Assembly (NCBI GenBank): GCA_026770705.1
Contig: JANJGN010000007.1
Coordinates: 97,402,001 to 97,466,000, forward strand
Direction of reading: 5' to 3'
Length of the DNA: 64,000 nucleotides
DNA from: Isurus oxyrinchus
Taxonomy: Eukaryota
This document shows, in pieces, positions 41,656 through 61,829 of the stretch; position 1 is the first letter of the stretch, and each line of letters starts with the position of its first letter. The notes beneath the pieces were generated by a model. That model saw only the letters and a program-made list of their open reading frames with translations, did no database searches and was not told the origin of the DNA. The translations under genes were made by a program, and so were the position numbers.

Positions 41656-41821
41656 CGGCTGGGACATGCTGTTTGTTATGACCCTCCACCCATTAGGACG
41701 TACGGCCCACATACCTAGAATCGCACTAGTATTGAAATTCATATACCACGTAAATCATTTGTCTGATGGGCAGAACGTATTTTGGCTTGAGGGACTCTTC
41801 CTGTTTGGTGCGAATATCACA
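41656..41821 (+). repeat. Direct copy of 42907-43074 inserted 1.25 kb upstream, specific to unit 2
   Basis: About 4 differences in ~167 bp; absent from unit 1 at ~11722. Confidence 0.9.
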
Positions 41822-42731
41822 CGTATTATTCCGCCATCTCCCTCTGGCTTTTCCAGCCACACCACATGACTATTTCAAAGCACCACCACATGGAAGTTCC
41901 CCTCCAAACTGCACAGCGCCCTGACGCCGGACTCAAATGCTGGAACTCCCTTCACAGCAGCCGTGTGAGTGTGTTTATACTAGATAGAGTGGGGATATTC
42001 AAGGCGGCATCTCACCATCAACTTTTCAAGGTTAATTATGGATATGCAACAAATACTTGCCTTGCCAACGTCGACCACATTTCATAAATTTAAAAAAATG
42101 TTCACTTGCTACTCCATCACCCATCAAGGCAACATTAAGTTCCACTTGTGTGTTAGTAGCACACAGCTTTATCTCATCACCACCTCTCTGGAGCCGTCCA
42201 TTATCTTTAACTTGTCTCTCCAAACCTCTCCTGCCATTTTCAGAGACTTTTGCATTGATATATAAACAACGCTCCATCGCATTTTAATTGCTTGGTAGTA
42301 CAGAACTTGAATATTGGTGAAAGAAAGGGATTTTGTTGAAATTTCTCATCTCGACTTTATTGGGACAATCGCAAGAATACCAATGTCAGTGTAGGCAACA
42401 ACTTTAGGGTGTATGAGTAGACAGTGTTGATTGGTTGGAAACTGGGCTCTAATTGGTAGAGGAATTGACATGTAGAATATACCAACTAATGGTGCCTGGT
42501 AGCTAACTGCCAAGCATTGTTTTAAATTTAAACCAGGCAGCTTGGCTAATTGGTCAAGGCATTGGCCTGAGGAATGAACCAGCGAAAGGCAATCACTTTG
42601 TTGAGTTGAAGCAGGAGCAACGTGTGTACATGTTCCTTCTGTCTGAAAATAATATTGCCCTGTGTATTAATGTATCTAGCTTCCGGGGCACGCAAATGCA
42701 TCACACTCCGAGCCTCAGTGAGAATCTTAAA

Positions 42732-42809
42732 TTGGTTGTCAGTGTACTGAGGATATGTAGCAAATGTTATTTGGTTGTCAGTGTACTGAGGATATGTAGC
42801 AAATGTTAT
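42732..42809 (+). repeat. Perfect 39-bp tandem duplication
   Basis: ttggttgtcagtgtactgaggatatgtagcaaatgttat x2. Confidence 0.92.
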
Positions 42810-43413
42810 TTAATCGCAGTATGACATCAAATGTTGAACACTGTGTTTTGAGTTTTACAAGCACGCGCTGTTTGGATGTGGTCTGTACCTTGCCCATTGC
42901 GAACAACGGCTGGGACATGCTGTTTGGTATGACCCTCCACCCATTAGGACGTACGGCCCACATGCCTAGAATCGCACTAGTATTGAAATTCATATACCAC
43001 GTAAATCATTTGTCTGATGGGCAGAACGTATTTTTGGCTTGAGGGACTACTTCCTGTTTGGTGCGAATATCACATGTGTTGCTCCTGCACAGTGGCAGCG
43101 TGAAACAGCGAGCTTCACCTGCTGCTCAAATGTTTGACATACCTTGCTCTTCCAGTTCCAGTTTTATCTCGTCACCAGCAGAATTGTTTAGTCACAATAA
43201 ACATTACCAAATTACGAGAAGTTGCAGCCAGTCATGATGAGCTATATTCAGTTACCATCAGCGCGATCAATCTGCCACTACCATCACGGGGTCACATTCA
43301 GAAACATACTGTTTAAAGCGTAGATGGGGATTCACTACTCACATTGGCAGATGGATGCAAAATCAGAGAACATCGATATAAGATGATGTGAAAAAAGGGG
43401 GGACAGCAACTTG

Positions 43414-43810
43414 ATGGTACTGGTGTTGATGACTGGGTGATGATGTTCCAGTGTCTGCTTGATTCTGCTGGTCACCCTATGTTCCTGTTAGAGTCTGGAT
43501 GTTGCAGGAGACCATGCATTTTCTCTGGAAAGTGAATGCACTTTTGCTAACCTAGAGTTTATGTTGATAGGGAATATTCCTGGTTATTCATGATGTTGCT
43601 AAGGACTAGTTATTGGTAATGATAACAGACTGAGAAGTTTATTTGCTGGTGATTGTGAAACGGTGACTGGAATACGCTGATTGGGATTGGTACTTTTACT
43701 AGCTATTGGATGCTTTTTCAGGTGGCAGTGCTTTTACGGTAGGCTGACAGGTGATGTATCTCGTGATTGTGTTGTGCTGCTGCTGAATGGCTAATCAGCT
43801 TGTGAATGGG
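43414..43810 (-). repeat. Inverted copy of 44118-44514 (397-bp arms, 307-bp spacer), specific to unit 2
   Basis: Reverse-complement alignment above 90% by eye; replaces ~20 bp present in unit 1 at ~13262-13280. Confidence 0.9.
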
Positions 43811-46439
43811 AGCTTTAAAAAAAGCAACGAGAGTTTAGGACCTAGAATGAACTGTCTTTAAATGAGAATTGGATAATTATCTGGAGAGAAGAACTGCAGT
43901 GCAAAGCAGAATAAAAATGGAGAGGTGGGTCAAGATAAATTGCTCTTGCAGGGGGCCGGAATAGGCACGGTCTAATTGCCTTTTTCTGTGCTGTAAACTT
44001 TCAATGATTCTGTAATTATATGATACCAGAAACACAGAAACCCCAGTGGCGGCATCCAGTCATCACTGGCACCTGGTCACCCTGAACGCCCTTGCCCAGT
44101 CAGTAACAGCAGCATCCCCCATTCTCAAGCTGATTAGCCATTTAGCAGCAGCACAACGGAATCACGAGATACATCATCCATCACCCTACTTTAAAAGCAC
44201 TGCCACCTGAAAAAGCATCCAACAGCTAGTAAAAGTACCAATCACAATCAGCGTATTCCAATCACCATTTCACAATCACCAGCAAATAAATTCCTCAGTC
44301 TGTTATCATTACCAATAACTAGTCTTTAGCAACATCATGAATAACCAGGAATATTCCCTATCAACATAAACTCTAGGTTACCAAAAGTGCATTTACTTTT
44401 CAGAGAAAATGCATGGTCTCCTGCAACATCCAGACTCTAACAGGAACATAGGGTGACCAGCAGAATCAAGCAGACACTGGAACATCATCACCCAGTCATC
44501 AATACCAGTACTATTCAGTCACCAGTAGCAACATCTAATTAACCGGATAAATACTTAGACACCAGCAGCATCACTTGGTGACCAGCAAGAAAATCGCAAT
44601 CACCAACCTTTCATTCACCAGCAACTGTATTACCTAGTCTCAAGCAGCAGCATCCAGTAACCAAAAGGATCAACCACACATCAAGAAATCAATCCATTCA
44701 CCAGCACGACCATTGGACAGTCAGCCACAATAGCTTCTAGTTACCATTGCCAAGCTTTTGGGAGATGGTGTTGTAGTGGTAACATCACTGGGCAAACAAA
44801 CCAGAGGCCTAAACTCATTGTCTAGTAACAGGGTTTCAAATCCCTCTCCGGCATCTAGTGGGATTGTAATTCCGTTAAAAATTCTGCAATTGAAAGCCAA
44901 CTTCAGCAATGTTGGCCGTGAAACTATTGTTGATTGTCACCAAAACCTATCTGTTTCCTTCAGGGAAAAAAATTTGCCATCTGCTAAATATGATATTGTC
45001 CTGGTCTGGCCTACATGTGACTCCAAACCTACAGCAACTGACTCTTAACTACCTGCTGAAATGGCCTGTCAAGCCATTTAGTTCACAGTCAATTAGGGGT
45101 GAGTAGTAAATTCTGGTCTTGGCAGTGCCACCCACATCCCTTGAATGAGTAAAGAAACACCAGCCAGATTATCCAATCACCAGCAGCATGGCCCAGTTGC
45201 CAGCAAAATCGTGCAATTAGTGGCAGCACTATTAAGGCACCAGCAAAATTAGCCAGACACCATCATTAAACTACTGAACATAAAGTACAATTCCTTCTGC
45301 CGAAGTATCATACAGTCATAGAGTTATAGAAGTCTATAGCACAGAAAAAGGCCCCTCAGCCCATCGAGTCTGTGCCGGTCAAAAAAGTGCCTAAATATTC
45401 TAATTTAGTTTTCCAGCACTAGGCCCATAGCCTTGTATGCCATGGCATCGCAAGTGCTCATCCAAATTCTTCTTAAATGCTATGAGGCATTCTGCCTGTA
45501 CCAGACTTTCATGCAGTGAGTTCCAGATTCCCACCCTCCTCTGGGTGAAACAGAATCTTTTTCACATCCCCTCTAACCTTCCTGTCCCTTACATTAAATC
45601 TATGGCCCCTGGTTTTTGATCCCTCTGCCAAGGGGAAAAGTTCCTTCCCGCCTATCCTATCTATGCCCCTCATAATTTTACACACATCAATCGTGCCCCC
45701 CTACCCCGCACCCCCCACCCCCCACCCCATCCCCCCTCAATTTTCTCTGCTCAAGGGAAAATAACCCCAGTCTCTCCAATCTATCCTCAAAACTAAAATT
45801 CTCCAGCCCAGTCAACATCCTCGTAAACCTCCTTTGTCTAGTGCAATCACATCCTTCCTATAATGCGGATCCCAGGACTGCACGCAATACTCTGGCTGTG
45901 GCCTTACAAGCGTTTTATACAGCTCAGCATGGCCTACCTGTTTTTACATTCTATGCCAACATTCTAGAAATATGTTGGATCAGTAATCTCCCTATTTCCT
46001 TCTTGAACGAGTCCCACTGCTCTGATGCTGATTTACCTAAAAGCAGCGTCTGCCAGTCCACTCTCGCCAAATCACATCTGATCTTATTGAATTCTGCCTT
46101 CCCCCAATGTAGAACTCCGATATCTGACCCATCCTTGTCCTTGACATGAAAGCCTTGAATCTATCGGAGTTATGATCACTATTTGGAAAATGCCCCCACA
46201 CCCACACACATCCCACACCGGCCCACATCGCAACTGTTGATTGAGAGCCTGCCGTATAAATTCAGTGGAGGTTCGATCGTTTCTACCAACCTGGCTGTCA
46301 TCAGTTCCAAACATCCAAGTCTGTTGCATGCCTGACAGATTATCTGCAGTGGTGTGTAATGTCCTAGGTAGCGAAGAATTCTTGAAAAAAATGCGATGTT
46401 GTCCTGTCATCCAGCAGTGTTTCCATTGTGTAGTCGCAG

Positions 46440-46806
46440 TTCTCTGAGACCAAACGATGCAGGGAAACCTGAATGGAGCCAGAGCACTTTCACCGCAACC
46501 GAACAATAGTATCAGTAAAAAAATTCTTCAGAGCTGCAGCAGTTCGGAAACTATCACGTGATGCGAAAATGTTCCATCTTCTCTTCAACAACGAAGATAT
46601 GTGGGCGGCTTTAACCCTCACGGCCTCTTCTCAGCTCTGACGTGAAAGTAAAGTCAGTGTATTGAAGTTGTAGATTCAGCCAACTTGTGAATCTTTAAAT
46701 CACAACACGTTCAATGTCAGGTTATCTTCATATCGTTCCATACGGCACCCCCCAGTGTTTGCCACGGACTTGAAGCAACAGCGATTGAGTTGTTTGAGTG
46801 CGCAAA
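46440..46806 (+). promoter_or_regulatory. Probable TATA-less proximal promoter of the receptor gene
   Basis: Non-repeat sequence directly upstream of the ATG, well conserved with 15850-16221. Motifs present in both copies: ACCGCA (RUNX-type, 46492), CGGAAA (ETS-type, 46545), GGGCGG (46603), TGACGTGA (CRE-like, 46638). Confidence 0.45.
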
Positions 46807-46861
46807 ATGCGCCAGCTCGATGTGCTGCGATACGTCTCAACACTGGGCATCATTTACACGG
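46807..46861 (+). CDS. Exon 1, leader/signal peptide MRQLDVLRYVSTLGIIYT
   Basis: ATG in context aaaATGc; phase-1 donor G|gtaaat; short 188-bp intron to the V exon; paralogous ATG at 16222. Confidence 0.75.
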
Positions 46862-49800
46862 GTAAATATATTTACACATGTCTGATAAATAAGAAGAGAG
46901 ATGAGAACTGAGTAGATATCACTTAGGTAAAATGTTTATTGTACAGTTTCCCAGTTCCTTTTGTTCTATAATTTGTAATATTTCCTCTTTATTCGTGTTG
47001 CTAATCATTGTCTTTGCGCATAAACGCTATTTGTGCTTATTTCTGACAGTAGCTGATGGGGCCACCCTCTCAGCGACTCAGTTTCCCGTTCGTGCGATTT
47101 CAGTGAAAGGTGCAAATGTTTCTATGAATTGTTCGTTCGGGCTTTTCGATTCCAACGCATGGATGAATGTTTATTGGCGGAGAGGCAGTAAGAACAGGAC
47201 ACTGGATGTGACTGCAGACGAAAGGAAAGTAATGATACCGTTGAAGCAAGGATCATCCGAACTCCACCTGCTGAATGTGAGTTTCCAGGATGCAGGAGTC
47301 TATCATTGCAGCGTGAGAGACAGGGCAGGAAAGATTTCCAATGGGAATGGGACTGAGCTGATTGTACACGGTGAGTGAGAGGGAACGGGTAAAGAGTTAG
47401 GATAAAATTATGAAGGTATACCTTACAAAATAGTTAACAGAAGAGCAGCAAGGCATTTGTCTTTCTTTGGAACTGTTATTGCTTATCGCAATTGGCAGCG
47501 ATCCCTTTCCGTTCACCCGGAGCTGCAACATTCATCGATCTGCGGATATCATAACTACTGATCTCAGCCAATCATTGTTGCTTAATGCTCTATCATTTAG
47601 TTAACTGTATTTTATTTAATTTAGTTAATTTCCTGAGTATGAAAATCTCTGGATTGGCTGGAATTTATTGATTATTCCTATTTCTCGTTGAGAAAATGGT
47701 AGTGTCTATTTTTCTTGAATCACTCTTGCGACGTGGTGAAGGTCCTAGCACCGTGCTATCACGGAGGGGTTCCAGGATGTTGATCCAATGAGGACCACCC
47801 TCTTAGCTGAGACATATCTCCCGTGTTCAAAATTCCTCAGGCAGTGGAAACAGCCGCTCCTTTTCTACCCTGTCAAGTCCCCATCAGAACCTTGTATGTT
47901 TCAACGTGATCACGTCTCATTCTCCTGACCTCTGGAAAACATAAACCCAATTTGCTCATTCTGTCATCATAAGGCAATCCTCTCTATCCGTAGACCAATC
48001 TACTGAACCTTCCCTCCATTGCTTCTAATTCAATAATAGGATGTATTAAACATGGAGATCAAGCAAAAGATAGAATGACGGTGTTGGGTCGCTAAAGCCC
48101 GGTGCACGCGTAGCAAAAGTTATTTATTCTTGTCTTCCAATCCCAGTACAATAAAGGTCAACATGCCATGTTTCTTCCTAATTGCCTATTGCGCCTGCAT
48201 GACAATGTTCTATGTTCCTTGTACGAGTACCCAAGTCCCTCTAAACACCATCATTGACAGGATTCATGTTAACAACATATTCTGCTTTACCGTTGTTACG
48301 AACGAAATTCATGCCTCACACTTGCCCACATTTTACTCAATCTGCGAACGTGTTGCTCGCTCACTTAACTATCTGTCTCTCTTTGCAGCCTCTTTGTGTC
48401 CTCATCACAACCTATATTCCCACGTAGCTTTGTGCTGAAGGAAGCTTAGATACATTCCGTCTCTTTGGCGAAGTCAATAACATAGATTCTAAAAAGCCGT
48501 GCCTCCAGAGCTGTTTCTCATGGCATTCCACTTGTCACAGCCTGCGAACTCGAACAGAGCATATATATCCCTCCTCGCTGCTGTCTCTTCACCAACCGAC
48601 TATTCATGCTGATATATTACCCCCAACTCCGCATACTTGGCCATATGCATTAACCTTTTGTATGGCACCTTATCGAACGACTTTTGGAAATCCAATTACA
48701 CAACGTCGACTTTTTCATTTTATTTAACTTACTAGTTACATTCTCAAACAAAAAAATAATAAAACATGCAATAAATGTGTCAAACACGAGTACCGTTTCT
48801 TGAAAGCACGATAGCATTGCCACACTATGACTTTCGACGTACTTTATTAAGAATTGCTTCATAAGAAGGTCTAGCACTTTCCCGAAGGTGATTCTAGGCT
48901 CATTGCCCTGTTATGTACTGTTTACTTTCTCCCTTCCTTCCCTAATAGCGGCGTTGCATTTGCTAACTTTTAATCTGGTGGGACCCTTCAGCACCTAGAG
49001 GATTTTGGAAAATCGTAACCAGTACATTCCCCGCCTTTGCAGACAAATATTTTCACAATTTAGGATGTAGGCCATCAGGTTCTCGTGGTTTGTCGGATTT
49101 TAGATTTTCAAATTTTCTTCAATACAATTTCTCTATTGATGCTAAAATGATAGTTGTGCTAATATCAAGCACCTGGCTCAGCAGGGTGCACGACAGGGCA
49201 TTAAGTATTCCTGGATAGAACGCGTTAAGGATGGATTGGAAATCAAAATAAGGCAGACAAGTAGCATTATTGATCAAACAGTGTTTGCAAAATGGGAGAG
49301 ATAGTGCGGGCAAGAACGGGATTTGCTCGGTTAGAGCCATGAAATAATATTTGTATTTCAAGTGTTCGATGTATTTTCAGGGAAATCAATTAGTTCACAT
49401 GATACAGAGGGGCAAACTTGCAAGAAATTTAGAGAATTGCAAGAATTATAGGCTAATTATAATGAAGGACTTTTTTTTTAAATGGGCTGGCGTGTTAATA
49501 CAGTTAAGGGCAAGATTTTCTCCAGAGTGTTCAAGATAATGTACATCACCATGTTTTCAGTCCAACGAGGAAGTAGTCAATACTGGATTTATTTCTCAGG
49601 GATGAAGTCGTTGAAATGAATCAAGGTGTGTTACCAGTATTAGAAAGTCATTTTAGTGTCCTGAGCTTTACGTTGGTTATGGAACAAAAAATCAAAGAAG
49701 AATCGAAGTAAAGATAATTAAGTGGAGGAGAGCCAAATTTCCTGATGTCTGAGCCCGCTAAAATGATATTGAAGATTGACACACCAAAGTGTAATGGAAA

Positions 49801-52800
49801 GACCTTTAAAGGCGATATGTTTCAAGTACATTTCTGGCCTAGAGACAGGAAACAGAGTGTGGTGATGAACAGTTTTTCTTTCAAATAGGAGGAAAATTTG
49901 TGATCGCGTTCAGAGGATGAAGAGAATTTTGAAGTGAGTATAAGACTAGAGAGGCCTGCAAGCGTTTTGTGCAAGTAACATACGTTGGCGGCATCGATTG
50001 CAAAAGTGGTTTATCAGCAAATGGGGCCCATGGCTTTATAAATGCTTCACATTGAGGGCCTTATGAATGGACCCCATTGGAGTATTCTGTCTAGTTCTAA
50101 GCATCACGCTTTAGCAATGAAGCGACACATGATAGAAGATGCAGAAAGATTCAAAAGAATGGGTCCATAGATGAGAAGCTTCAGTAATGCGGAGTGATTT
50201 GGGAATCTGGGTGGTTCTCCTTGAAGAAGAGAAGATTAAGAGCACATTTTGTAGAGGCGATAACAACCATAAGCGATCTAGACAGAGCAGATAAAAACAA
50301 TTGTTGCCGTTGGCGATGCAAACGAGAACTTGAGAACATATTGGCGAGAGGTTTGGTCAAAGAGGCAAACAGAACACAAAGAGGAACATTGTAGACGGCG
50401 AGTGGTTAGAATCGGGAAGTCACTGCCTGGAAGTGTGATTCAAGCAGTTTCAAACAAGCCCTTCAAAATATAATTTGGAGCTTTTAAAGAATCTTTCAGA
50501 GCTACGGGATAAAGGCAGGGGAGTGGAATTAGTGGGTTTCAGTTGCAAGGAGCTGACGTGTTGAATGCTACATTTCTCTGTTGGAAGCGTTCTGTGATTC
50601 TACATACACACTGATCTCCGTAACTACACTTGCTTCGGATAACATTTTTGTGTACATTTATTTGGCTTTTCTCTCTTTTTATTTGTGTTACATGAACTGT
50701 GACAAAGACTCGAAATTATTCCTGCAGAGCGCGAACTGTGGTCAAAGGCTGTACATTATCTCGGAAGTGAATCCATTAAGTTAGCTCTGTTACATACAAC
50801 CTGTTTTATGTTAGACTTTATGAACAACGCCCAGGCTGAACTAAAGGCAAGACTGTTTTCCCTGTTAGTGTAACTATTACACACTTGGTGCAGCTATCTT
50901 ACAGAATGCAATGCCTCCCTATTGACAAAGTTGTTAACTAGATAAAACAGATACGGCCAATACTTCACGGCATTAAAGCTCTGGAATTCCATGCGGACTG
51001 CAGCGGTTCAAGAAGACTGTTCACCGTCACCTTCTCAAGGGCAATTCTGGCTGTGCAATAAATGCTTGCCTTGCCAACAACGCCTACACCCTATGAACGA
51101 ATAAAGCAACTGAAGGTGCAAATCACACAGAAGTATCTGGCAACAGTTTTAAGACATCCTTGGCGGATTCTGTTTAACTGGGTCTTATGTTAGTTGCAGT
51201 GCACAGGCATAGAGTGGTTCCTCAGCCATTGCAGAATGAAAGCAGGAATGAAATAAAAACAAACCAAAATTAATCTCGGGAGAACTATCCCTGCACTCCA
51301 GCTTCTAAAGATTGTAGATTCTTGGCTGTCATTCTTTTTTTTTGGCACGTCATACACGAATAGCGATTTTAACTAGTTTCTGTTAATTAATTCCCAGTGC
51401 CGCCAACGCCTGTGAAAGTTACCCTCCTGTCCTCTTCGCCCCTCACACTTCTCTGTACAACAGCTGGCTTCTTTCCAGCGGCGGTTAACATCACTTGGTA
51501 TGGAAATGACATCGAACTTATATCTGGGGTAAACTCCACGGTAAAATGGAACGAGGAGGGATTATATGAAGCTTCCAGCTCCGTCCGCCCTGTGGAGATC
51601 GAACAGGTTTATAAATGCCAGGTTTCTCATGTCTCTCTCGAGGTCCCAGCCAACAGTAGCTACAGAGTTCGTGGTCAGGGTAAGATTCACACATTGAAAA
51701 TACTGCTCCAAGCTGTATCTGTGAAAGATATAGGGGCCTGTCAAGTACTTTTTCGTTCCTTACCCTGTCCCAGAACTTTCTTAATGGGTGAGTTTGTAAA
51801 AATTTAGTGTGTTCATTACAATATCGAAAATTGTTTGACGAAGTGCCAGATTATAACGTACTACTTAAGATACATTGCTGTGCGATTAGAGGACATATAC
51901 TGGCTTGAATAGAAAATTGGCTTCATTTTGAAGGGAAGAGATTTATCATCTGTGATAGCATTCTTTTTATTCTTTCACAGGCTCAGGGAATCGCGAACTA
52001 GGCCAGCATTTATTGCCATATATAACTGCCCTTGGGAAGGTGATAGTGAGCCGGCTTCTTGTACCACTGCAGTACATACCCAGAGCTGTTATGAAGGGGG
52101 TTCTCGAATTTTGATGTACTGGCAGTGAAGTAAAGGTAGTGCAGTTGCAAGCCGGGATGGTATGTGCTTTGCAGGGTAATTTTCAGGAGATCGTGTTCCC
52201 ATGCAGCTGCTGCCCTTGCCCTTCGAGGTGGTAGAGTTTCAGGGTTTGGACGGTGCTGTCGAAGGATCTTTGGTGAGTTCCTGCAGTGCATCTGATAGAT
52301 GGCACACAGTACTGGCACTGTGCGTCCCTGCTGGAGGTAGTGAATATCTAACCTGTGGACAGGGTCTTAATCAAGCCAGCTGCTTTGTTCTGGGTGGTTT
52401 CCAGCTTCTTCAGTATTGAAGATGCACTCATTCAGGCAACTGGAGAGTGTTCCATCATACTCCCGACTTGAACCTTGTAGATTGTGGACAGTGTATGAAC
52501 AGCCAGGAGTTGAGTTACTCGCCACAGAATGCCTACCCCTGGGCATGCTGGTCTTGCCAAAATATGTATGTGTCTGGTCCAGTTCAATTTCTGCTCAATG
52601 GTTGCCCCCACGATGTTGATAGAGGGGCACTCAGCGATGGCAATGCCATTGAGTGTCACGTGTAGATGGTAAAATTCTCTCTTGTTGGAAATGGCCATTG
52701 ACTGGCACTTGTGTGCTGCGGATAGTATGCTCCAGGCCTGAATGTTGTCCAGGCCTTGATGCGTATGGACACGGACTATTTCAGTATCTAAGATGCGCCA

Positions 52801-55800
52801 ATCATACTGAATACTGTGCAATCATCATTAACAGCCTCACTTATGATGGAGGGAGGGTCGCTGGTGAAGCAGCTGAAGATGGTTAGGTCTAGCACACTAC
52901 CCTGAGGAATTCCCTCAGCAATGTCCAGAGACTGAGAGCATTGACCTGAACAGCCAAAACCAGCTTCCTTAGTGCTAGTAGATATGACTCCAGCAATTGG
53001 AGACCTTACCTGATACCCATTGACTACGGTTTTGCTGGGGCTCCTTCAGCCAAATACTGCCTTGATTTTGAGGGCACTCACTTTCCCCTCACCTCTTGAG
53101 TTCAGTTTATTTGTCCATGTTTGGACAAAGGCTGCAATGAGGTCAGGAACTGAATGGCCTTGGCAGAAGCAAAAGTGGGTTGTAAGTGCCGCTTGTTTGT
53201 TGAATCGATTCATCGCATGGATTTATTTGTTTAAAAATATCCTAATATCTGTTCCTTTCTCTAAAACCCTTTGAATGTCAATTTATAGAAAAACAACCAC
53301 AGTGCCTATAGACCTTTTCAATTAATTTCCAAATAACTCAGTCAAGTAAGTAAAAATCAATTTGTTTTTAACAATCTGTGCTCATTTTCAGTTAGCAACC
53401 CATTCTCTTTTTTGAACCGCCAAGTAATTTTGTCCTGATTTATTGTATTTAAATATTTTTGTGTTAAATTAGCTCACTGGCCGGCAGTTATTGAATTTAC
53501 ACATCGTCACATTTTGAATAAAGATGTAACAGTTGCATTTGTCTAATCATTTTACACCAATCCATGACGAAGGCCTGACCAACAGATTTCCCACAATGAT
53601 AACTCCGAAAACAGGAGACAGATCATGGCCTGGTTCATATAGTTGATGCCATTCCCAAGAACTCATTTTTCATCACCTTCGACTAAATCCCCCATAATCC
53701 ATGCTCGATGGCTGGAACTGGGTCTCTTTATTAACCAGTCTAATTGATGTATCTTTCCGACACACTGTCACAGGGAGAGGGACAGACAGAAACTCCCAAA
53801 TATAGTTAAGCCTAATGGTATGTATACACCCATCAATCATGAACAATGCTGCATAATGATTGAATAAAATATGACAATTAATCAGAATTAAATGCTGATA
53901 TTATCACAGATAGTTTAAGTGTTTTACACTGTTTTGTACTTTAGTCGTTCAATCATGATACAATATGATCCCAGAATAAGAGGGAGAATGTAATTAGCTT
54001 AGTATCTCAGTGAGAGACGATGGCTGTGATTTGTCGATTGGGCCTGACATCTGATGTTGCTTAATTATTTAGCATCCTTCCCTCTGTAAGATGCTAACTT
54101 TCGACTTTTTCTACCCGTTTAGCTCACGGTTCCGCTACTTTCCCCTATATATTTGGATGTGCTGGGGGAGGACTAATAATCCTATTGCTGATAATTCTTG
54201 TCAAGGTTCGGAAAATATGCATAACTAAAGGTAAGACGTACCACTATACTAGTTCAGAATTGGGTTTTATCGTCTAATTACTGTTCAACGCTGCCGTAAC
54301 AGGAAGCTTTTATGGCTCAGTGGGTCCTAAAATGCAATGTAATCTTTAGATTGTTTTCACTATGCGTGGGCAATAATCCTGACGGCATTTCATTTTCTAC
54401 TGTAACAGGGCGTGGTTCTGTAATCTATAAATCTATAAATTAAAAAAAACCACCAATGTTCGAATGTCAAGAGAGGGGCAAAACCTTGAGTAGAAATAGT
54501 CAACCAAGCCCTGGGAATATAACATGTAACAGATGTTCCGCTGTAAAATTAACACCTTTTCATTCAGTAGCAGAAAGGGATGTGACGTCCCTACTGATAA
54601 GTATGATCACTTCGTTTGAATGTTGGATAAGTTTTGCCGGACATGTTCCCGTATCGAGTTCATGATGGAATTGTTCATTGATATAACTTATGCTGTCCAA
54701 CAGGCACAGGGATGACGGATACTATACCCGGCCAATTCGAGAAGCAGGTCAGTTTAATGCTAATGTGATATTGAAATATGCTGCCCACGTACTTCATCGT
54801 TATATCAGTAATGCTGTGACACCAGAGCTCCTCCCGCCAAGTCCGTACGTCCCTCAGTGCTCATCTCTGCTACGATCATGCAGTCAATCACCCATAAGTC
54901 CAGCGATGGAACCCGAGTACATGAAATACACCAGCCCTCGTAGACATTCGAGGATTTGCATTCTGTAAATGCGGATCCGATAGTTGTTCAAATGCGTGAA
55001 GCAGCATAGCTTAGCTCAAAGAACAGAACATGCAGAACATACTCAGTAGGTCAGGCAGCATTTGTAAAGGGAAACAGAGTTAACGTTTCATTTTCATAAC
55101 CAGTCATAACCCAGCTCAATACTGTTATAAACGACATCGCCACCCATGAACATTTCGGGGAATGAGGGAGGGAGGTTGCGGGGAGGGGCTGTGTGTTTAC
55201 AGGGAGTTTCCCCTGCCATTACCTATCCACAGCCCCAATCCTTCCTGCGCGCAGGGCCACTGAGGCCAAACGCATGGTTCTGAACTCAACAAACCCTGAA
55301 CTTCGTCTTCCGTTAAATCAGTAGCACAATCCCACGCCTTGCATAAATTGACTTCGAATAGGTATTTAGGTCATTATCAAGTGCTTCAGGGAATTAGTTG
55401 TCTCTGTTTCCTTGCTTGACTATTGCTGCAAAAGAGTGTTCATCATTTAATTGTTTTAGAATATTGCCTTTAGGTATAGCTATTAAAACTTTAGCTGTAG
55501 ATAAATGCGGACATCTGGTTGAGAAAATGAGATAAACAACTCTGATATAAATGCAGCTCAATGAACTTGGGTTTATTACGCTTCAACTGTGGTTTGTGTG
55601 ACTCTTGTAAGATCGGAGTTGAGAGTGAAATACTCGAACAATGAATTATCCAGCTCTAAGCTTGTAGTAAAAGAAAGAGTCATACAACTAAATTATAAAT
55701 ACAAATTATTCATATGGGTTAACAAGGGAAGCGTGGAAAGTAAAATAATTTATGTTTGAGGACATCCCTGTACAAGCAATGTCGTCATGGAAGCGAGGTG

Positions 55801-56889
55801 AAGCTTTTTTGCCGTTGTTTGTTTAAAAAACTTGTGTGTGTTTGCTGACAGAAGCGATAAGTTCACTTTGGGGAACAGAAGGAGACATTTGTTGCTTTGA
55901 TCTCCGTGTAGCTCTCGGAATTGGGATAGGAAAGACAATAAATGTTAATCAGTTAGTCCTGTCCTTCAATCTGAGTAAATACAAATTTCATCATTTACCG
56001 TGTGGAATACAAGTGGGGCAGTATCTCAGATCGGATTTTCTGAGATGAAAATACAGCTCATGGGTTAAGCTAACTGTGCTCCCTTTAGAGCGTTGTGGCA
56101 GAAAGTAGTTAGTAGAGTTAGCTTGGAGAACTGACAACGCAGTTGGGCATCTGAAGGCCATCCAAACAAGAAGCTAAGACATGTATAGTCGTGAGTTGTG
56201 TATCGGAAAGGTAGAGAGTTTCATAGACAAAAAGCTAATGGAAGGACCCCAACAGAATCTTACGCTGGAGGTTCGCTGGAACACTGGAGAGATTATAAGT
56301 GAATTCTGGAGGGCTGTGACATGGGCGTTGGGATGCATCTTAAATAAGTAAATAAATCTTCAAATTTGTTGCAATGTGTTAAGGAATTATAGGGGTGTGG
56401 TTAAGTAAAAAGTAGAACAGAGCTCATAGCATAATTAATGATAACCTATGATGTTAAATTTCTAATGCCAACATTGTGTGGCTCTTTTTGATATTACATT
56501 GTTCGGTTCTTCATTGTTTGTTTAAAAACGTGAAACCTTGTGCCATGATGTTATGGGTTAATTTCTGGGTGCTCAGATATCTGCTTGAAAAATTAACGGT
56601 CCTTTGCAGGATTGTGACACTATTACCAGACGGGTTATGTCATGCAATCCTATGTCCTGCACAATTTATATGCTTCCTTCGTTGCTCTATTGCGTTTGAT
56701 GACTTGATATTCATCTCATGCTTCTGCACTACCCTTCCTCAGACACAGCATGAAGGAGAGGCGGAGATTCTATCATACACTGCTGTGAAATTCCGTGAAC
56801 AGAAGAAAAATGGGAAACGCAGACATCAGGAAGACCAGACTGTTTATGCTCAGGTACGACTGAGAAACATAACAGCCCATTCGAACTAG
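46807..56889 (+). CDS. Six-exon IgSF type I membrane receptor (leader-VJ-C1-TM-ITIM/ITSM), 318 aa; non-rearranging antigen-receptor-like (SIRP/NKp30/VJC1-like) inhibitory receptor. Exons 46807-46861, 47050-47370, 51398-51679, 54123-54230, 54704-54747, 56743-56889
   Basis: Manual splicing gives 55+321+282+108+44+147=957 nt, an open frame ending in TAG at 56887-56889. All introns are GT-AG with compatible phases 1,1,1,1,0. Domain motifs are diagnostic, and every exon except V has a paralogous counterpart in the upstream copy. Confidence 0.88.
47050..47370 (+). CDS. Exon 2, V-set Ig domain with in-exon J-like segment
   Basis: Acceptor ttctgacag|, donor G|gtgagt. Motifs: TQFP, G.NVSMNC, VYW, L.L.NV.F.DAGVYHC, GNGTELIV. 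Confidence 0.93.
51398..51679 (+). CDS. Exon 3, C1-set Ig domain
   Basis: Acceptor ttcccag|, donor G|gtaaga. C1 signatures: LLCTTAGFFP..VNITW, NEEGLYEASS, YKCQVSHVSL. Confidence 0.93.
54123..54230 (+). CDS. Exon 4, transmembrane exon AHGSATFPYIFGCAGGGLIILLLIILVKVRKICITK
   Basis: Branch-like gctaac, pyrimidine tract, acceptor gtttag|, donor G|gtaaga. A ~21-residue hydrophobic run is followed by basic KVRK. Paralog at 22515-22621. Confidence 0.88.
54704..54747 (+). CDS. Exon 5, 44-nt cytoplasmic micro-exon GTGMTDTIPGQFEKQ
   Basis: caacag| ... cag|gtcagt. It converts phase 1 to the phase 0 needed by the last exon. Same length and splice sites in the paralog (23159-23202). Confidence 0.75.
55424..56619. 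mobile_element. Probable solo LTR in the last intron of the intact gene
   Basis: Same termini and CTAT repeats (55420-55423, 56620-56623) as in unit 1. Confidence 0.55.
56743..56889 (+). CDS. Exon 6, cytoplasmic tail with ITIM (LSYTAV) and ITSM (TVYAQV)
   Basis: Acceptor cccttcctcag|; translation TQHEGEAEILSYTAVKFREQKKNGKRRHQEDQTVYAQVRLRNITAHSN*. Confidence 0.88.
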   Translation, partial: TQHEGEAEILSYTAVKFREQKKNGKRRHQEDQTVYAQVRLRNITAHSN

Positions 56890-59800
56890 GACCACTAGTA
56901 TCTGACCTCAGTAATGTGCATTGACAATCTGCAACTATAATTTTGAGTAACAGGTGCTACTGACATGTCATTGTTGCTTCCACAGATCAAGCAAGGGGCG
57001 GACGTTAAACTGATGTATGTGTCTTTGGATTTCGCCACTTCCCAGAAAACGGAATGAAGGAAGCAGAAGGATATGGGAACAGAGTATACAGAGATAAAGA
57101 AAAAATAGGCAAACGGTGAACACTGGATCTTATAACAAACTTAAAATGTCAATGCTTTTTGCAGTTACATTGGCTGGCCATGCTGCTGTATGAATATTAC
57201 GTCCATCTGAACATAGTAGGTTTCTTTTAAGCTGCATTGTTATTCATCAGGAAGGCAGGAAAAAGCAGAGGATATTAGGAAAGCAAAACGCTGACAACTG
57301 GACCCGGGCCTTTTGTTTTAATCTTCAAACTCTGCAAAATCAAGGAATCTGTGTTTGATATATAGTAGGTTGGGAATCGATAAGGCTAATGATTTGGGCC
57401 ATTACTATATAAGGCTGCATTGCAGTCTTAAATTGTATTTAAAGCACATAAAAAGCTAATCGGCTTTCTACCTTTCCCTCAGTGTTCATGTTCCACAGGG
57501 ACCTCCTCCCAATCTTATTTATCAAAATCCATATTTGTTTTTCTATTCCATTCTATATCATTTGTTGATCAAACTTCTGAAATGTGCCTTTGTGAGTCGC
57601 ATCGATTTTCCCTTGTGATGGGGAACTGTGTGTGCTAAACATTTTCTGACTAAAGAGATTCCTCACAGATGTATTTATATATATATACATATATATATAA
57701 AACCTTGTGTTTATGACTAAAGTTGTTGTCTCAGCCAAAAGTGGAAATATCTGTTCTGTATCTACACTGCCAACGGCTTTTATCATCTTGGAATCCTCCA
57801 TCAGATCACATATCAGCTTTAAAGTCAATCATAAATAAGAAGATGAGTCAGCTATTCAATAGGATGATGGATAATATTCTACCTGAACTGTTCGTTTTCG
57901 CTATTGCCATATCCCTTGACTATTTCAATATGCAATAATATATCTATTTATTTATCGGATATACTCAACGGTAGAGCATCCAAAGACATTTGGGAAATAA
58001 ATCCCAAGTATCTACAAGCCTTTGAGTGAAGAAATGTCCCCTGATCTCCATTGAACCACATTCTTAGTTGTTCTCTATGAATAGGAAAAGGGATTCGATT
58101 ACTCCCTATATCTCTCAGCATTGTATGTACAAATTCATCACAAGTGTGCAATACAGGATGGGCATGACACCACTAGTAATATCTTGGATACAGTGAGCCT
58201 CATTGTTTGACCATGCCATAATTGTTGCTGTACCATGCAGCTTCTCCGGCTCACGAACTAATTATTTTGCAATGAACCGCATATTCCAACACTCCCTATT
58301 TTTAACACCCTGTTGTGATTCCAACTTGCCAATAATATTTTTAATTGCCTCTTCATTCCCACACACTTACTTCGACTGTTTGTTCATCCGAGCCCTGCTG
58401 TGGCTGTTAATCCTCGGCATTCTGACAAACTTCACTTTCTTGACGATTTTAATTGGTTCTCGTTACATCCCCAATCTTCCTTACCCTTTCCTTCCAGTTT
58501 GCAGTTACCTCCTGATGATACATTTTATCGTTCTCCTATATTTTCGAATAATTGTTAATAACTCGTTTCACATAACCCATGTGACAGACTCAAATTTAGG
58601 TTAAAAACAACCACTTCAACTTCCATAATCAACGTTGTTAAGCTTCACCCTCAATATTTCAATGCTCTAGTGCTGGAATGTACTGTCCTTTAGGCGGTGT
58701 GTCCTTACTTGTTTTCACAGTTAGCCTGAAGGAAAGGTCATGGCATCCATTCTTCTTGCATGGTCGCAATGTGTATTTGCCCTTCACCTTTCTAATAGTG
58801 GTGACCACATCCCTGGTCAGTTTAGTTTTTGGGTTCATGTGCATCCCATCCGAGAGGGTTCAGCAACGTTTCCCTTATCTCCAGTATATATAATTCCTAT
58901 ATATTATATAGTGACCCTTCCAAAAATATCATCAAACCTATGCTGTGGAAATGATATTACCCAATTTATCAACGAATCGACACTAAACAACAGAGATGGG
59001 TTTGAACAGAAATGTTTTTGTGTCCTTTGATGTCATGCCTCACATGATTGTTGTTTTTGCTATGTGCCCTGCAAGGCATGTCCTCATTCCCTTCAACCTT
59101 CAACTTCTAATTGAGTGATTTACAGCCGTGTCCCCTTGCCAATCAGAGATTAGGCCCAGGCGTCCCTTTCTTTACCTTCCCTACAAACTTTCCTTCTTCA
59201 CCAGTGGGCAAAGAGTTCGACGCTGGAGGCTATGCTAGTGGCAATGAAATTCTAGATTGAAGCATATTCGCTTTAGTATCAATTTTAAACCCTTGTCAGA
59301 TATGAGTGTTTGAACCCCGATAGATATGTTTTAAACTTGGTTTATCTATGGTGCATTCATCAGTGCATTGATGATTTAACCAAGTTGTCTCAAACGATCT
59401 TTGAAATTCTGGAAAACATATATTTTGTTTCATTGCAAATGTCTCCTTACTTGTCAATTGAAATTCCAGGTCCCTCCCTTCCATAAAAAAACTATATAGA
59501 AACAGAAGTATATCATTTTGCCTCTCGAGTCTGTTCGGCCATTCAAGAATATAATGGCTGATCTGTGAAAAAGCCCCATGTCCTCAATTTTGACTCATGG
59601 CCCTTATTATGTTTTGATGACCAACAATCATCAACCAGATATTTTTTTTAAATATAAAAATAGAAATTAATCTAACACGGATTGTCATTTATGGAATAAA
59701 TATACAGATGTCCACCATCTGTTACGTGTAGAGGTGCTTGTCTACTTCATTCCTAATTCTAGACTTCCAACAAACAGAAATAGCTTTCTTCACACCAACA

Positions 59801-61829
59801 GGCCTATTCAAACTTCAAGCAAAGCTCAATTTTCCCATCTGAATTCCAAGGAATGTTGTCTTTGTGTATGTAATATCCCTTCATAATTTGATCCTGAGAC
59901 AATGTTGTATTGACACGAGGGCAAATTATATATTCCCTCATATTTCTCCATTAATTAATTTGACGCTAGATGTGGTGCCTAGAATTGCTACCCCCCAAAA
60001 CACTTCTCACTCACTTTCAGGCAACTTCGCTTCCCTTTTAGTTAGGGATAATTTTAATTTCGATCCATGAGTAAACCCCAATAACACTTTAGCACCTTTT
60101 GTTTTGACTTCTGCCGAATCCTCATCTTTAGGGAAGTAAAAGAACACTCGTAATAGTGTTCTGCTACATCACAACTCCAGAGATGTAATTTTTACTTTTA
60201 AAGTGCTCAATGTAATGCCGCATGCGAGTAGTTTATTACAATACAGACTGCAGGGGGCAGAGAGACCTGAAATGGTTTGCCATGTACATTTGACATTATC
60301 AGATAATCCAATGGAACTTTAAATTTATACTTTGGGACCTGATAAATAATACGCGACACACGGTGAATCTTTTTTTTTCCATGATTACTGTCTACACATC
60401 TATCTATACCTGTGTGTAATTGAATGACATACCCAGCGCCATCCGGGCATCATCCATGACCTGACATATTAGCGTACATCAGTGGATAAACTAAGTGATT
60501 TATCACTACCCTATCCATTCCGAGGGATATCGCGGCCCATTTTACCTCACATTCCTGAGATAAATTAATTCAAAGGAACGGTGATGAACCTGAGATCTTC
60601 AAGCTATAATCATTTAATTCTAGTCGCGCAACACTGAGCAATTGATTTACTCCTCTGTTTCTGGACACTTTCTCCATTACGCCCATGTCAGCCTCAGTTG
60701 CAACAGGCTGTTGTTCCCGTGTATGTGGCTGTTGTTTAAATTTCAGACTCATTTAATGTGGTGACTTTTGAGAAATGTCGCATGCCATGAAAAACGAGAT
60801 ATAAACATTAATGAACAGGATTTCCTTCTATATCTGATTTTATTCCAAAAAAGAAGCGCCCTGTTACTGGGTTCCGCTAACAGATTAAGTCAAACTAGTT
60901 GGTGACTCTGATCTGGCATTTGACCTTCCACATATTGATGCTCTGGCCGCTTCAGGGACGGCAGAAAAAGCAGTGAGTTCACGTCAACGCAGCAGCTGTG
61001 CTGACGGGAATGTAAAGTAGCAATTCAATTTATAGAGGTTAATGTTGCATTATACAAAACGAGGAGCCAATGTATGTTTAATTTTTATTTGAACAAATAA
61101 CCGTTCATCTATTTGTATTTGCACAACACAGTTCATATCAATTATGTGGAGTGTACATAATCAGCTTTTTCAACGTGACGAGGAAGCCACTGTGAAGTTC
61201 TTCCCGCTCTCCATCGTTAGCGAAAATCAGGATTAAATTAATTGATGTTCTTTCCTATGACGCCATGACATATTTCTCCTGCAACGGCTTATAAAATGAC
61301 ATCGACCTGACAAGTCGCTTTTCCTTCTTTTTTTCTCTTCCCGTGGATATGGTCTGATCAGAGTATTATCCCATGCATTTTCCCCATTTTTATTTCAGAT
61401 TTGCAGTATCTGCAGTACTTTGATATTACAACAAATGATTTATATCAGTGTTGTATCCTTTGGGGTCGGTTTAGGTCTTTACAACAATTGCTCAGGAGTT
61501 AGAAGAGGTTTTAATTAGTCTAACCTTTTCTGGGTAAGTATTGATATAACCCCGGCGGAACCATCCGAATGTTGTGATTTAACCCGCATTTTCGGATGGT
61601 TCCCAGCGCAGCGTAATTGTCCAGAGGAACTATGAATTTCTGGGCAATTGTCATGTAAACCTCACCTGGGAACTTCCCAGAGGGGTTCCCGAACTCATCT
61701 TTGGAATACCCCTCCAAATCCGATGCTGCGGAGCAAGAAGGTTACGGGCCGTTATGTTAAGCATGCATAAAACAATACTTCCACATCAACTGATGTATTT
61801 ATTCGACTTCTAGCCATCGCACGTTAAAG

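What the first reader, a model, noticed from the sequence alone, without database searches (positions are those of the whole stretch)
46807..56889. Intact non-rearranging VJ-C1 antigen-receptor-like gene with an inhibitory ITIM+ITSM tail, in a tandem birth-and-death array
Seen: six exons scattered through TE debris splice into a 318-aa leader-V(J)-C1-TM-cytoplasmic protein that the ORF track shows only in pieces. Established: C1-set domains are largely restricted to Ig, TCR, MHC/B2M, tapasin, SIRP and some B7-family members; a V+J+C1+TM chain is the architecture of a TCR chain; non-rearranging VJ-C1 genes (PRARP/VJC1-type) are discussed as antigen-receptor precursors. Here that ectodomain has no RSS and no charged TM residue, and it is wired to a phosphatase-recruiting tail. 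Inference: a cartilaginous-fish family of germline-encoded inhibitory (NK/myeloid/T-cell) receptors related to the antigen-receptor ancestor, possibly undescribed or only auto-annotated as SIRP-like.
Basis: partly seen in the sequence, partly recalled or inferred. Interest (0 to 1): 0.9.

Follow-up and report, generated by a model that had tools for sequence, protein, structure and literature searches.

The report
Shark SIRP-like V-C1 inhibitory receptor gene
This is a real, apparently intact shark immune-receptor gene (one antibody-like V domain with a built-in J motif, one C1 domain, a membrane anchor and an inhibitory tail); it is one more member of a large shark, ray and chimaera gene family that public annotations already hold under inconsistent automatic names.

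Summary
All six predicted exons are present with canonical GT-AG sites and Ig-type phase-1 junctions. They encode leader, V-set domain with J motif (GNGTELIV), C1-set domain (YKCQVSH), uncharged transmembrane segment and a tyrosine-motif tail. No RSS occurs in the window.

The 3' end needs correction. Homologues splice after TVYAQ to a seventh exon (56986-57057). This gives about 330 aa with ITIM, ITSM and ITIM. A TGA there removes the ancestral fourth motif.

The window holds two roughly 30-kb tandem units about 80% identical. The upstream copy lacks its V exon and has a broken C1, so it is a pseudogene.

At least 88 related proteins exist in 14 chondrichthyan species. NCBI names them SIRP-alpha-like, tapasin-related-like, NCR3LG1-like, CD276 homolog or Ig-lambda-like. 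Some relatives have short tails and a membrane arginine, which suggests an inhibitory/activating paired system.

It is not a true SIRP, because it has one C1 domain rather than two. Profile scores place it about equally far from Ig light chains, SIRP-alpha and UrIg2.

Expression is untested: no RNA run held the locus. This scan had already met the family on nearby DNA of the same genome (s1-300789). Verdict: a new member of a known kind, of moderate interest.

The parts
46807..46861 (+). Exon 1: split leader (MRQLDVLRYVSTLGIIYT, then the first base of the next codon)
   Evidence: ATG and donor gtaaat read. It matches the homologue leaders (MSAFDLPSYLSVLGIIY and similar) by tblastn.
47050..47370 (+). 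Exon 2: V-set domain with a germline-joined J motif (…SNGNGTELIVH); Cys27, Trp42 and Cys86 of the exon
   Evidence: Pfam V-set 3.4e-10. Family V HMM 5e-38. AF2 pLDDT 87 with the G strand split at the G-x-G bulge. Best structural match NKp30, then VNAR. No RSS.
51398..51679 (+). Exon 3: C1-set domain (FFP…NITWY…GLY…YKCQVSH)
   Evidence: Pfam C1-set 2.4e-11. Family C1 HMM 1.4e-33. AF2 pLDDT 93. All top fold matches are MHC class II beta-2 C1 domains.
54123..54230 (+). Exon 4: connecting peptide and transmembrane segment (FPYIFGCAGGGLIILLLIILV) with stop-transfer KVRKICITK; no charged residue in the membrane span
   Evidence: It is the only hydrophobic stretch between C1 and the tail. Splice sites read. 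It matches the family pattern GCAxGGLIILLL.
54704..54747 (+). Exon 5: 44-nt cytoplasmic exon (GTGMTDTIPGQFEKQ)
   Evidence: Candidate listed. tblastn to homologue GTEISEDIPGQFEEQ.
56743..56853 (+). Exon 6: cytoplasmic exon with ITIM LSYTAV and the start of the ITSM, TVYAQ; ends at donor CAG|GTACGA
   Evidence: Homologues have an exon junction exactly after TVYAQ.
56854..56889 (+).
   Evidence: Homologue gene models do not use it.
56986..57057 (+). Exon 7: IKQGADVKLMYVSLDFATSQKTE then TGA. It completes the ITSM as TVYAQI and adds ITIM LMYVSL.
   Evidence: Acceptor ttgttgcttccacag read. tblastn to homologue tails.
57058..57108 (+). Former coding tail now behind the premature TGA (RKQKDMGTEYTEIKKK, old stop TAG); it holds the ancestral fourth motif TEYTEI
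   Evidence: The paralogue and homologues read R at the TGA position.
16222..16260 (+). Upstream paralogue: leader remnant, cut by a 1.7-kb deletion that removed the V exon (the equivalent of 46846-48532)
19323..19600 (+). Upstream paralogue: C1 exon with an in-frame stop, two frameshifting indels and loss of the second cysteine
22515..25701 (+). Upstream paralogue: transmembrane (22515-22621, 1-nt indel), cyt1 (23159-23202), cyt2 (25200-25295, 15-nt deletion) and last-exon (25583-25701, 1-nt indel) remnants
1532..60733 (.). Two tandem duplication units of about 30 kb (1532-29216 and 30214-60733), about 80% identical. Each holds one receptor gene copy in transposon-rich spacer.
   Evidence: Self-alignment. 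Weak reverse-transcriptase hits.

Best explanation
The locus encodes a type I membrane receptor. It belongs to a large multigene family, seen so far only in cartilaginous fish, with the layout leader, germline V(J) domain, single C1 domain, transmembrane segment and tyrosine-motif tail.

The window copy falls in a subfamily shared by sharks and rays and is of the inhibitory type. The likely mechanism is inferred from the motifs and from how SIRP-alpha, PD-1 and PECAM-1 work. The V domain binds a ligand. Src-family kinases then phosphorylate LSYTAV (ITIM), TVYAQI (ITSM, 23 residues downstream) and LMYVSL (ITIM). The tandem SH2 domains of SHP-1/SHP-2 dock there and damp activating signals in leukocytes.

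Other family members have near-identical ectodomains but short tails and a transmembrane arginine. The family therefore probably works as an inhibitory/activating paired-receptor system. It evolves by tandem duplication, rapid protein change and gene death.

Shown: gene structure, domain types, motifs, family membership, the dead paralogue and the absence of RSS.
Inferred: expression, phosphatase recruitment, the pairing logic and the cell type.
For: - Gene anatomy and canonical splice sites.
- V-set and C1-set by Pfam, by family HMMs and by structure models and fold search.
- Trees place the window V in a 17-member clade with support 100, containing sharks and rays. They place the C1 in a 19-member clade with support 92.
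- Across 88 family proteins, long tails carry ITIM/ITSM motifs. Short-tail forms have an R in the transmembrane segment followed by IVDH.
- Inhibitory and short-tail genes of one species have sister ectodomains: P0161/P0178, P0183/P0020 and P0016/P0159.
- The reading frame has been kept. With the measured neutral divergence from the paralogue (15.7% mismatches, 1 indel per 100 nt), I expect about 3.6 stops, 4.3 frameshifts and 2.1 splice-site hits. The chance of staying intact by luck is about 5e-5.
- In a roughly 4%-diverged related genome (DNA contigs X1 and X4), all five listed indels are intronic.
- The ESM Atlas's nearest named clusters for homologue P0151 are SIRP-alpha-like, score 0.96.
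Against: - There is no RNA evidence at all. The only runs holding the locus are DNA, and the small putative RNA runs hold only transposon scraps.
- A TGA in exon 7 truncates the tail relative to homologues. This could be early decay.
- Exon divergence from the paralogue (15.9%) equals the intron divergence.
- All 9 differences in the C1 exon against the related genome change the amino acid. This fits diversifying selection but also fits relaxed constraint.
- No ligand, adaptor or phosphatase binding has been tested for any member.
Confidence: 0.68

Rival explanations
1. The copy is a young or transcriptionally silent pseudogene. It still looks intact, but it is already drifting in a birth-and-death cluster where neighbouring copies are dead.
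For: - A premature TGA removes the fourth tyrosine motif.
- The tandem neighbour is dead.
- An earlier follow-up found two dead copies 194 kb upstream (an AI note that I did not re-test).
- Exon and intron divergence are equal.
- There are 9 nonsynonymous and 0 synonymous changes in C1 against a related genome.
- No RNA was found.
Against: - About 990 nt of frame and all 12 splice dinucleotides are preserved, although roughly 10 disrupting events are expected under neutrality.
- The stop lies in the last exon and leaves three motifs. Tail length also varies among intact family members.
- The related genome shows no indel in the five exons covered.
Confidence: 0.22
2. It is the shark orthologue of SIRP-alpha, a true SIRP family member that binds a CD47-like ligand on self cells.
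For: - NCBI's most frequent automatic name for relatives is SIRP-alpha-like.
- The ESM Atlas's nearest named clusters are SIRP-alpha, score 0.96.
- The family profile hits the SIRP-alpha ectodomain 2wng at 1.6e-27 and aligns GAGTELSV with the family J motif.
- The ancestral tail has four tyrosines, as SIRP-alpha's does, and short-tail partners with a basic membrane residue exist, as with SIRP-beta. The comparison with SIRP-alpha and SIRP-beta is from established knowledge; the family features are.
Against: - There is only one C1 domain. No second C1 exon exists in the gene, nor in the 88 relatives.
- Ig light chains score higher than SIRP-alpha against the family profile (60-65 against 53 bits).
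- With the window's own exons, SIRP is not among the best 60 PDB hits for either V or C1.
- No bony-vertebrate SIRP appeared in the sequence searches. The word-index method limits the weight of this.
Confidence: 0.07
3. It is a direct, little-changed descendant of the two-domain VJ-C1 precursor of antigen receptors. On this reading it is kin of UrIg/UrIg2, or the cartilaginous-fish counterpart of avian and fish PRARP, rather than a SIRP-like innate receptor. This overlaps with the best explanation in mechanism and differs in ancestry.
For: - It has a single-exon VJ with a split leader followed by C1, as in UrIg and UrIg2 (PMC12227049).
- That paper predicts a two-domain VJ-C1 ancestor.
- UrIg2 (9dmx) is the second-best PDB hit of the family profile and of the window C1 exon.
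- TCR-alpha V and NKp30 are the best single-domain V hits.
Against: - Whole-chain UrIg2 scores are summed over three C domains. Its V-C1 stretch alone scores below IgL and SIRP-alpha.
- UrIg and UrIg2 have three or more C domains and are single-copy and conserved or MHC/AgRC-linked. This family is multicopy.
- In this scan's unchecked notes, MHC markers lie on other sequence pieces.
- No PRARP sequence was available to compare.
Confidence: 0.12
4. It is a B7-family ligand (NCR3LG1/B7-H6-like or CD276-like) rather than a receptor.
For: - Some relatives are auto-named NCR3LG1-like or CD276 homolog.
- CD276 is hit at 2e-9 by the C1 exon and at 3e-23 by the profile.
Against: - The V domain carries a G-x-G-T-x-L-x-V J motif and resembles NKp30, VNAR and TCR V most closely.
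- The tail has tandem ITIM/ITSM motifs with SHP-type spacing.
- Paired short-tail forms with a membrane arginine are a receptor trait.
- CD276 scores below IgL, SIRP and UrIg2.
Confidence: 0.04

Closest known systems
SIRP family (SIRP-alpha inhibitory; SIRP-beta activating via DAP12)
   Same: - The N-terminal V domain has a J-like G-x-G-T-E-L-x-V motif and is followed by C1-set domain(s).
- The inhibitory members have four tyrosine motifs ancestrally, of the types xxYAxL and TEYAxI.
- Sister genes have short tails and a basic membrane residue.
- The genes form a multigene cluster.
- SIRP-alpha is the nearest named cluster by language-model features and is a strong profile hit.
   Different: - This family has one C1 domain, not two.
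- Sequence similarity to SIRP is no greater than to Ig light chains.
- Relatives were seen only in cartilaginous fish.
- The ligand is unknown.
- The window copy has lost the fourth motif.
UrIg / UrIg2 (non-rearranging shark VJ-C genes; PMC12227049, PDB 9dmx)
   Same: - Both occur in cartilaginous fish.
- Both have a single-exon VJ, a split leader and no RSS.
- Their C1-set domains are similar: UrIg2 is hit at 9.6e-12 by the window C1 exon.
   Different: - UrIg and UrIg2 carry three to eleven C domains.
- They are antibody-like, and the UrIg2 V-C1-C2-C3 fragment forms a disulfide-linked dimer.
- They are expressed in liver and gill and map to the MHC or the antigen-receptor complex.
- The gene here has one C1, an ITIM/ITSM tail and many tandem paralogues.
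PRARP genes of chicken and other non-mammalian vertebrates (Fu et al. 2019, J Immunol; cited in PMC10751288; details recalled from memory, paper not held)
   Same: As I recall it, PRARPs are non-rearranging V(J)-C1-TM proteins with inhibitory-type cytoplasmic motifs. That is the same two-domain layout.
   Different: No PRARP sequence was available from any tool, so similarity and orthology are untested. As I recall, PRARPs are a linked pair of genes rather than a large tandem family.
NKp30 (NCR3)
   Same: It is the best structural match of the window V model (3noi, E 1.4e-9, 26% identity). It has a germline VJ-type V domain.
   Different: NKp30 has no C1 domain. It has a membrane arginine and a short tail, so it is activating.
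Rearranging Ig light chains and TCR chains
   Same: They share the V-J-C1 order and phase-1 exon junctions. They give the highest per-stretch profile scores (60-65 bits for lambda and kappa chains). TCR-alpha V chains are the best full-length, single-stretch matches of the V exon; the very top rows of that search are multi-Ig proteins such as contactin, DCC and titin, whose scores are summed over repeated domains.
   Different: V and J are fused in the germline and there is no RSS. The membrane span has no charged residues. The tail signals on its own.

Membership tests
Chondrichthyan V(J)-C1 receptor family (unnamed; NCBI names SIRP-alpha-like, tapasin-related-like, NCR3LG1-like, CD276 homolog, Ig-lambda-like) | V-set domain ending in N-G-x-G-[ST]-x-L-x-V, directly followed by VPPTP and a C1-set domain | tested here: met
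   Window exons read …SNGNGTELIVH | VPPTPVKV…. Family HMM scores are 5e-38 and 1.4e-33.
Chondrichthyan V(J)-C1 receptor family (unnamed; NCBI names SIRP-alpha-like, tapasin-related-like, NCR3LG1-like, CD276 homolog, Ig-lambda-like) | Falls inside the family in trees of both domains | tested here: met
   V lies in a 17-row clade with support 100. C1 lies in a 19-row clade with support 92. Best identities are 63% (V) and 65% (C1).
Chondrichthyan V(J)-C1 receptor family (unnamed; NCBI names SIRP-alpha-like, tapasin-related-like, NCR3LG1-like, CD276 homolog, Ig-lambda-like) | Inhibitory-type members have a GCAxGGLIILLL membrane span, a 44-nt IPGQFEEQ exon, and a tail of ITIM, TVYAQ, LTYASL and TEYxxI | tested here: met
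   The last motif is present in the DNA but lies behind a TGA.
SIRP family | Ectodomain of one V and two C1-set domains | tested here: not met
   One C1 exon only in the gene. Nearly all of the 88 relatives show one V and one C1.
SIRP family | Groups with SIRP d1/d2 to the exclusion of Ig, TCR, UrIg and B7 domains | tested here: inconclusive
   Profile stretch scores are IgL 60-65, SIRP-alpha d1-d2 53 and UrIg2 V-C1 46 bits. No tree with SIRP sequences could be built.
SIRP family | CD47 binding; location in the SIRP gene cluster (conserved synteny) | not testable with these tools
There is no binding assay.
Rearranging antigen receptors (Ig, TCR) | V segment ending in an RSS, with separate J segments | tested here: not met
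   V and J are in one exon that ends at a splice donor. There is no heptamer or nonamer in 46700-47700 and no RSS-like pair in the whole window.
Rearranging antigen receptors (Ig, TCR) | Charged transmembrane residues for assembly with CD3 or CD79 | tested here: not met
   The membrane span FPYIFGCAGGGLIILLLIILV has none.
UrIg / UrIg2 | Single-exon VJ with a split leader | tested here: met
   The criterion is taken from PMC12227049.
UrIg / UrIg2 | Three or more C domains; linkage to the MHC (UrIg) or to the IgH/TCR-alpha-delta complex (UrIg2) | tested here: not met
   There is a single C1. Linkage was not testable. The scan's unchecked notes put MHC genes on other pieces.
PRARP | Sequence orthology to chicken PRARP1/2 | not testable with these tools
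   The paper is not held and no tool supplied a PRARP sequence. The likeness in architecture rests on memory only.
ITIM/ITSM inhibitory receptors (functional class) | Cytoplasmic [SIVL]xYxx[IVL] and TxYxx[VI] motifs spaced for tandem SH2 binding | tested here: met
   LSYTAV comes first, then TVYAQ(I/V) 23 residues later, then LMYVSL 13 residues later. Phosphatase binding itself was not tested.

The most novel reading that the evidence does not exclude
The family is an independent, ancient lineage of two-domain VJ-C1 membrane receptors. It would be the layout that Flajnik and colleagues predict for the pre-RAG antigen-receptor precursor, surviving in cartilaginous fish as a fast-evolving inhibitory/activating paired system. 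On this reading it is sister to SIRP, UrIg and Ig/TCR rather than derived from any of them.
Probability: 0.15. Interest if true: 0.8.

Novelty: new member of a known kind. Interest (0 to 1): 0.45.

Why it matters
C1-set domains joined to a J-bearing V domain are the signature of antigen receptors and of a few relatives (SIRP, UrIg, PRARP). A large, uncharacterised V(J)-C1 family is present in sharks, rays and chimaeras. It has inhibitory and putatively activating members and chaotic automatic names. That makes it a useful, testable addition to the debate on what antigen receptors looked like before the RAG transposon. It also bears on the innate receptor repertoire of the oldest jawed vertebrates.

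The single gene in this window adds little beyond a clean, nearly intact exemplar with a dead twin beside it. The value lies in the family, which deserves a proper name, a phylogeny and expression data.

Tried and rejected
- **RNA evidence.** The look-up of sequencing runs found no RNA holder. Read laying on 51300-57200 showed X1 and X4 to be DNA contigs of a genome about 4% diverged. X7 and X8 held only transposon scraps. Expression is therefore untested, not refuted.
- **Full phylogeny.** A tree against SIRP, PRARP, NKp30, B7H6, UrIg, IgL and TCR was not possible. The searches returned only chondrichthyan family members, and sequences may not be typed in.
- **PRARP paper.** It is not held. 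Searches for PRARP text gave only one citing sentence.
- **Prior description.** Literature searches for a description of the family found nothing. This is no proof that none exists.
- **Tail-only ESM Atlas search.** Scores were 0.80 or lower (C1orf162, LST1), so it gave no support for any tail homology.
- **Exon 5.** Alternative candidates were rejected in favour of 54704-54747 on homology.
- **A second C1 or V exon.** None is hidden in the introns.
- **Joined model.** The joined spliced protein was not assembled or searched. All searches were exon by exon, by reference, and protein lengths are arithmetic.

Full report
**1. What is in the sequence**

Between 46807 and 57057 on the + strand there is a multi-exon Ig-superfamily gene. 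I read each exon and its splice sites directly.

| Exon | Coordinates | Notes |
|---|---|---|
| Leader | 46807-46861 | ATG, donor gtaaat |
| V | 47050-47370 | acceptor ttctgacag, donor gtgagt |
| C1 | 51398-51679 | acceptor attcccag, donor gtaaga |
| Transmembrane | 54123-54230 | the only strongly hydrophobic stretch between C1 and the tail |
| cyt1 | 54704-54747 | 44 nt |
| cyt2 | 56743 onward | |

The first four junctions are phase 1, as is usual for Ig-superfamily exons. All searches were exon by exon, and protein lengths are arithmetic.

**2. Domains**

- Pfam calls the V exon V-set (3.4e-10) and the C1 exon C1-set (2.4e-11, 44 bits against a cut-off of 21).
- The V exon ends in SNGNGTELIVH. 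This is a G-x-G-T-x-L-x-V J motif fused in frame to the V, and a splice donor follows it.
- There is no heptamer or nonamer within 46700-47700 and no RSS-like pair anywhere in the window.
- The C1 exon has the FFP…W…GLY…YKCQVSH pattern.
- AlphaFold models built on a 50-sequence family alignment are confident: pLDDT 87 for V and 93 for C1.
- The V model has a G strand broken at the diglycine bulge and almost no C'' strand. Its best PDB neighbours are NKp30, shark VNAR, PD-L1 V, CD79b and TCR V.
- The best 50 neighbours of the C1 model are all MHC class II beta-2 domains, with TM up to 0.86 and about 30% identity.
- The membrane span FPYIFGCAGGGLIILLLIILV has no charged residue.

**3. The 3' end needs correcting**

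A HMMER scan of 1.84 billion proteins with the V exon found close relatives at 44-61% identity. Their sequences continue after TVYAQ with TKQG/IKQG…LTYASLDF…EYxEIK.

In the window, TVYAQ ends at 56853 and is followed by GTACGA. A good acceptor (ttgttgcttccacag) lies 132 nt downstream. It opens an exon reading IKQGADVKLMYVSLDFATSQKTE, then TGA at 57055-57057. After that comes RKQKDMGTEYTEIKKK and the old stop TAG.

The homology-supported model therefore has seven exons. Their lengths total 993 nt, which is 330 aa. The tail carries ITIM LSYTAV, ITSM TVYAQI 23 residues later, and ITIM LMYVSL 13 residues after that.

The TGA stands where the paralogue and homologues have arginine. It removes the ancestral fourth motif.

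It cannot be excluded without RNA.

**4. The array**

The window aligns to itself with a period of about 30 kb. Windows 1532-29216 and 30214-60733 match at about 80% identity.

The upstream unit carries the same gene in ruins:

- A 1.7-kb deletion removed part of the leader, intron 1 and the whole V exon.
- The C1 exon (19323-19600) has an in-frame stop, a 5-nt and a 1-nt indel, and has lost its second cysteine.
- The transmembrane and last exons each have 1-nt indels.
- cyt2 has a 15-nt deletion.

The spacer is transposon debris, with weak reverse-transcriptase matches.

**5. Is the downstream copy kept by selection?**

Non-exon divergence between the two copies is 15.7%, with one indel per 100 nt. 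Of the indels, 85% are not multiples of three.

Giving half of that divergence to each lineage, I expect about 3.6 new stops, 4.3 frameshifts and 2.1 splice-dinucleotide hits in the 993-nt coding sequence. The chance of staying intact by luck is about 5e-5. The frame has therefore been protected for most of the time since the duplication.

The protein sequence itself is not conserved. Exon divergence (15.9%) equals intron divergence.

DNA contigs from a related genome about 4% diverged (X1 and X4, from two studies) give a second view. They show nine differences in the C1 exon, all nonsynonymous, and two of them destroy N-glycosylation sequons. The chance of nine out of nine being nonsynonymous under neutrality is 0.05-0.08. 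All five indels listed against that genome are intronic.

This is the pattern of a fast-evolving immune receptor. It is also compatible with recent relaxation of constraint.

**6. Expression**

No run on record as RNA holds the locus. The two small putative RNA runs I laid hold only transposon fragments. Expression is untested.

**7. The family**

- Cluster look-ups and two word-index searches returned only cartilaginous-fish proteins.
- Fourteen species are represented: Heterodontus francisci, Heptranchias perlo, Scyliorhinus canicula and S. torazame, Mustelus asterias, Carcharodon carcharias, Cetorhinus maximus, Chiloscyllium plagiosum and C. punctatum, Hemiscyllium ocellatum, Mobula birostris and M. 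hypostoma, Hemitrygon akajei, and the chimaera Callorhinchus milii.
- There are often a dozen or more genes on one chromosome.
- The automatic names are inconsistent: SIRP-alpha-like, SIRP-beta-1-like, tapasin-related-like, NCR3 ligand 1-like, CD276 homolog, Ig lambda-like, MHC class I- or II-like, or uncharacterized.
- Eighty-eight fetched proteins have a V followed immediately by one C1.
- In domain trees the window gene sits in a well-supported subfamily of sharks and rays that contains no chimaera sequences. Support is 100 for V and 92 for C1.

Tails fall into two types:

- Long tails with ITIM/ITSM motifs behind a GCAxGGL…LLL membrane span.
- Short tails behind a different span that has an arginine near its outer end and finishes in IVDH. 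Examples are P0178, P0020, P0159, P0082, P0029 and P0200.

Genes of the two types from one species have sister, nearly identical ectodomains: P0161/P0178, P0183/P0020 and P0016/P0159. This is the hallmark of inhibitory/activating paired receptors. Adaptor pairing is an inference.

**8. Relation to known families**

A family profile searched against PDB sequences gave these scores per aligned stretch:

| Target | Bits |
|---|---|
| Ig lambda / kappa V-C | 60-65 |
| SIRP-alpha d1-d2 | 53 |
| SIRP-alpha d3 | 48 |
| UrIg2 V-C1 | 46 |
| CD276 | lower |

- With the window exons alone, the best full-length, single-stretch V hits are TCR-alpha V and NKp30. The very top rows are multi-Ig proteins (contactin, DCC, titin) whose scores are summed over repeated domains.
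- The best C1 hits are Ig CH domains, UrIg2, CD276, TAPBPR and MHC.
- The ESM Atlas puts SIRP-alpha clusters nearest to homologue P0151, at 0.96. A tail-only query gave nothing usable.

The gene works like SIRP-alpha in layout and probably in signalling. It fails the SIRP membership test on domain number, because no second C1 exists.

It shares the single-exon VJ and split leader of UrIg and UrIg2 (PMC12227049) but not their many C domains.

As I recall it, PRARP has the same two-domain layout. I could not obtain the paper or any PRARP sequence.

I found no paper in the held library that describes this family.

**9. Context in this scan**

Earlier notes on the same genome report the same kind of gene:

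- 194 kb upstream: two dead copies, followed up, with the same conclusion about the family (s1-300789).
- 930 kb upstream.
- 66 kb downstream.
- On other sequence pieces.

In those notes the MHC-type genes and an NCR3-like/C4 cluster are on other pieces.

**10. Verdict**

It overstates the novelty, and the tie to the antigen-receptor ancestor remains open.

The gene is a new, probably functional member of an uncharacterised but publicly annotated chondrichthyan V(J)-C1 paired-receptor family. SIRP is the closest named family.

Noticed in passing
window 51680-51760 (+), just past the C1 donor: Reading through the C1 donor gives GKIHTLKILLQAV…. Its first nine residues or so resemble the start of the short-tail (arginine-bearing) membrane segment that follows C1 in P0020 (GRFHTINIFRLILG…). 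This may be a relic of an alternative short-tail ending encoded directly after the C1 exon. The resemblance is weak.
   Followed up: partly
other species' proteins P0178, P0179, P0020, P0159, P0082, P0029, P0200, P0201: These are short-tail family members with an arginine in the membrane span and a conserved IVDH(L/F)K ending. Their ectodomains are sisters of ITIM-bearing genes from the same species. They are candidate activating partners. No such copy lies in this window.
   Followed up: partly
window 51466-51655 (C1 exon) against DNA contigs of runs X1 and X4: All nine differences from a related genome about 4% diverged change the amino acid. T32P and T47M remove N-glycosylation sequons. Exon divergence is 3.2%, against 4.1% in the flanking intron.
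   Followed up: yes
window 43414-43810 and 44118-44514: A 397-bp inverted repeat at 94% identity lies about 2.3 kb upstream of the gene's start. It is much younger than the 80%-identical tandem units and is probably the ends of a transposon.
   Followed up: no
window 2806-3156 (+) and 38222-38644 (-): Degenerate reverse-transcriptase ORFs (Pfam RVT_1 at 7e-4 and 5e-5, below the cut-off). The spacer between the receptor genes is LINE-type debris that was duplicated along with the genes.
   Followed up: partly
P0004, P0005, P0014 (other species): Annotated isoforms join the V exon directly to the transmembrane exon and skip C1. Because both junctions are phase 1, the same skip would stay in frame in the window gene.
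   Followed up: no
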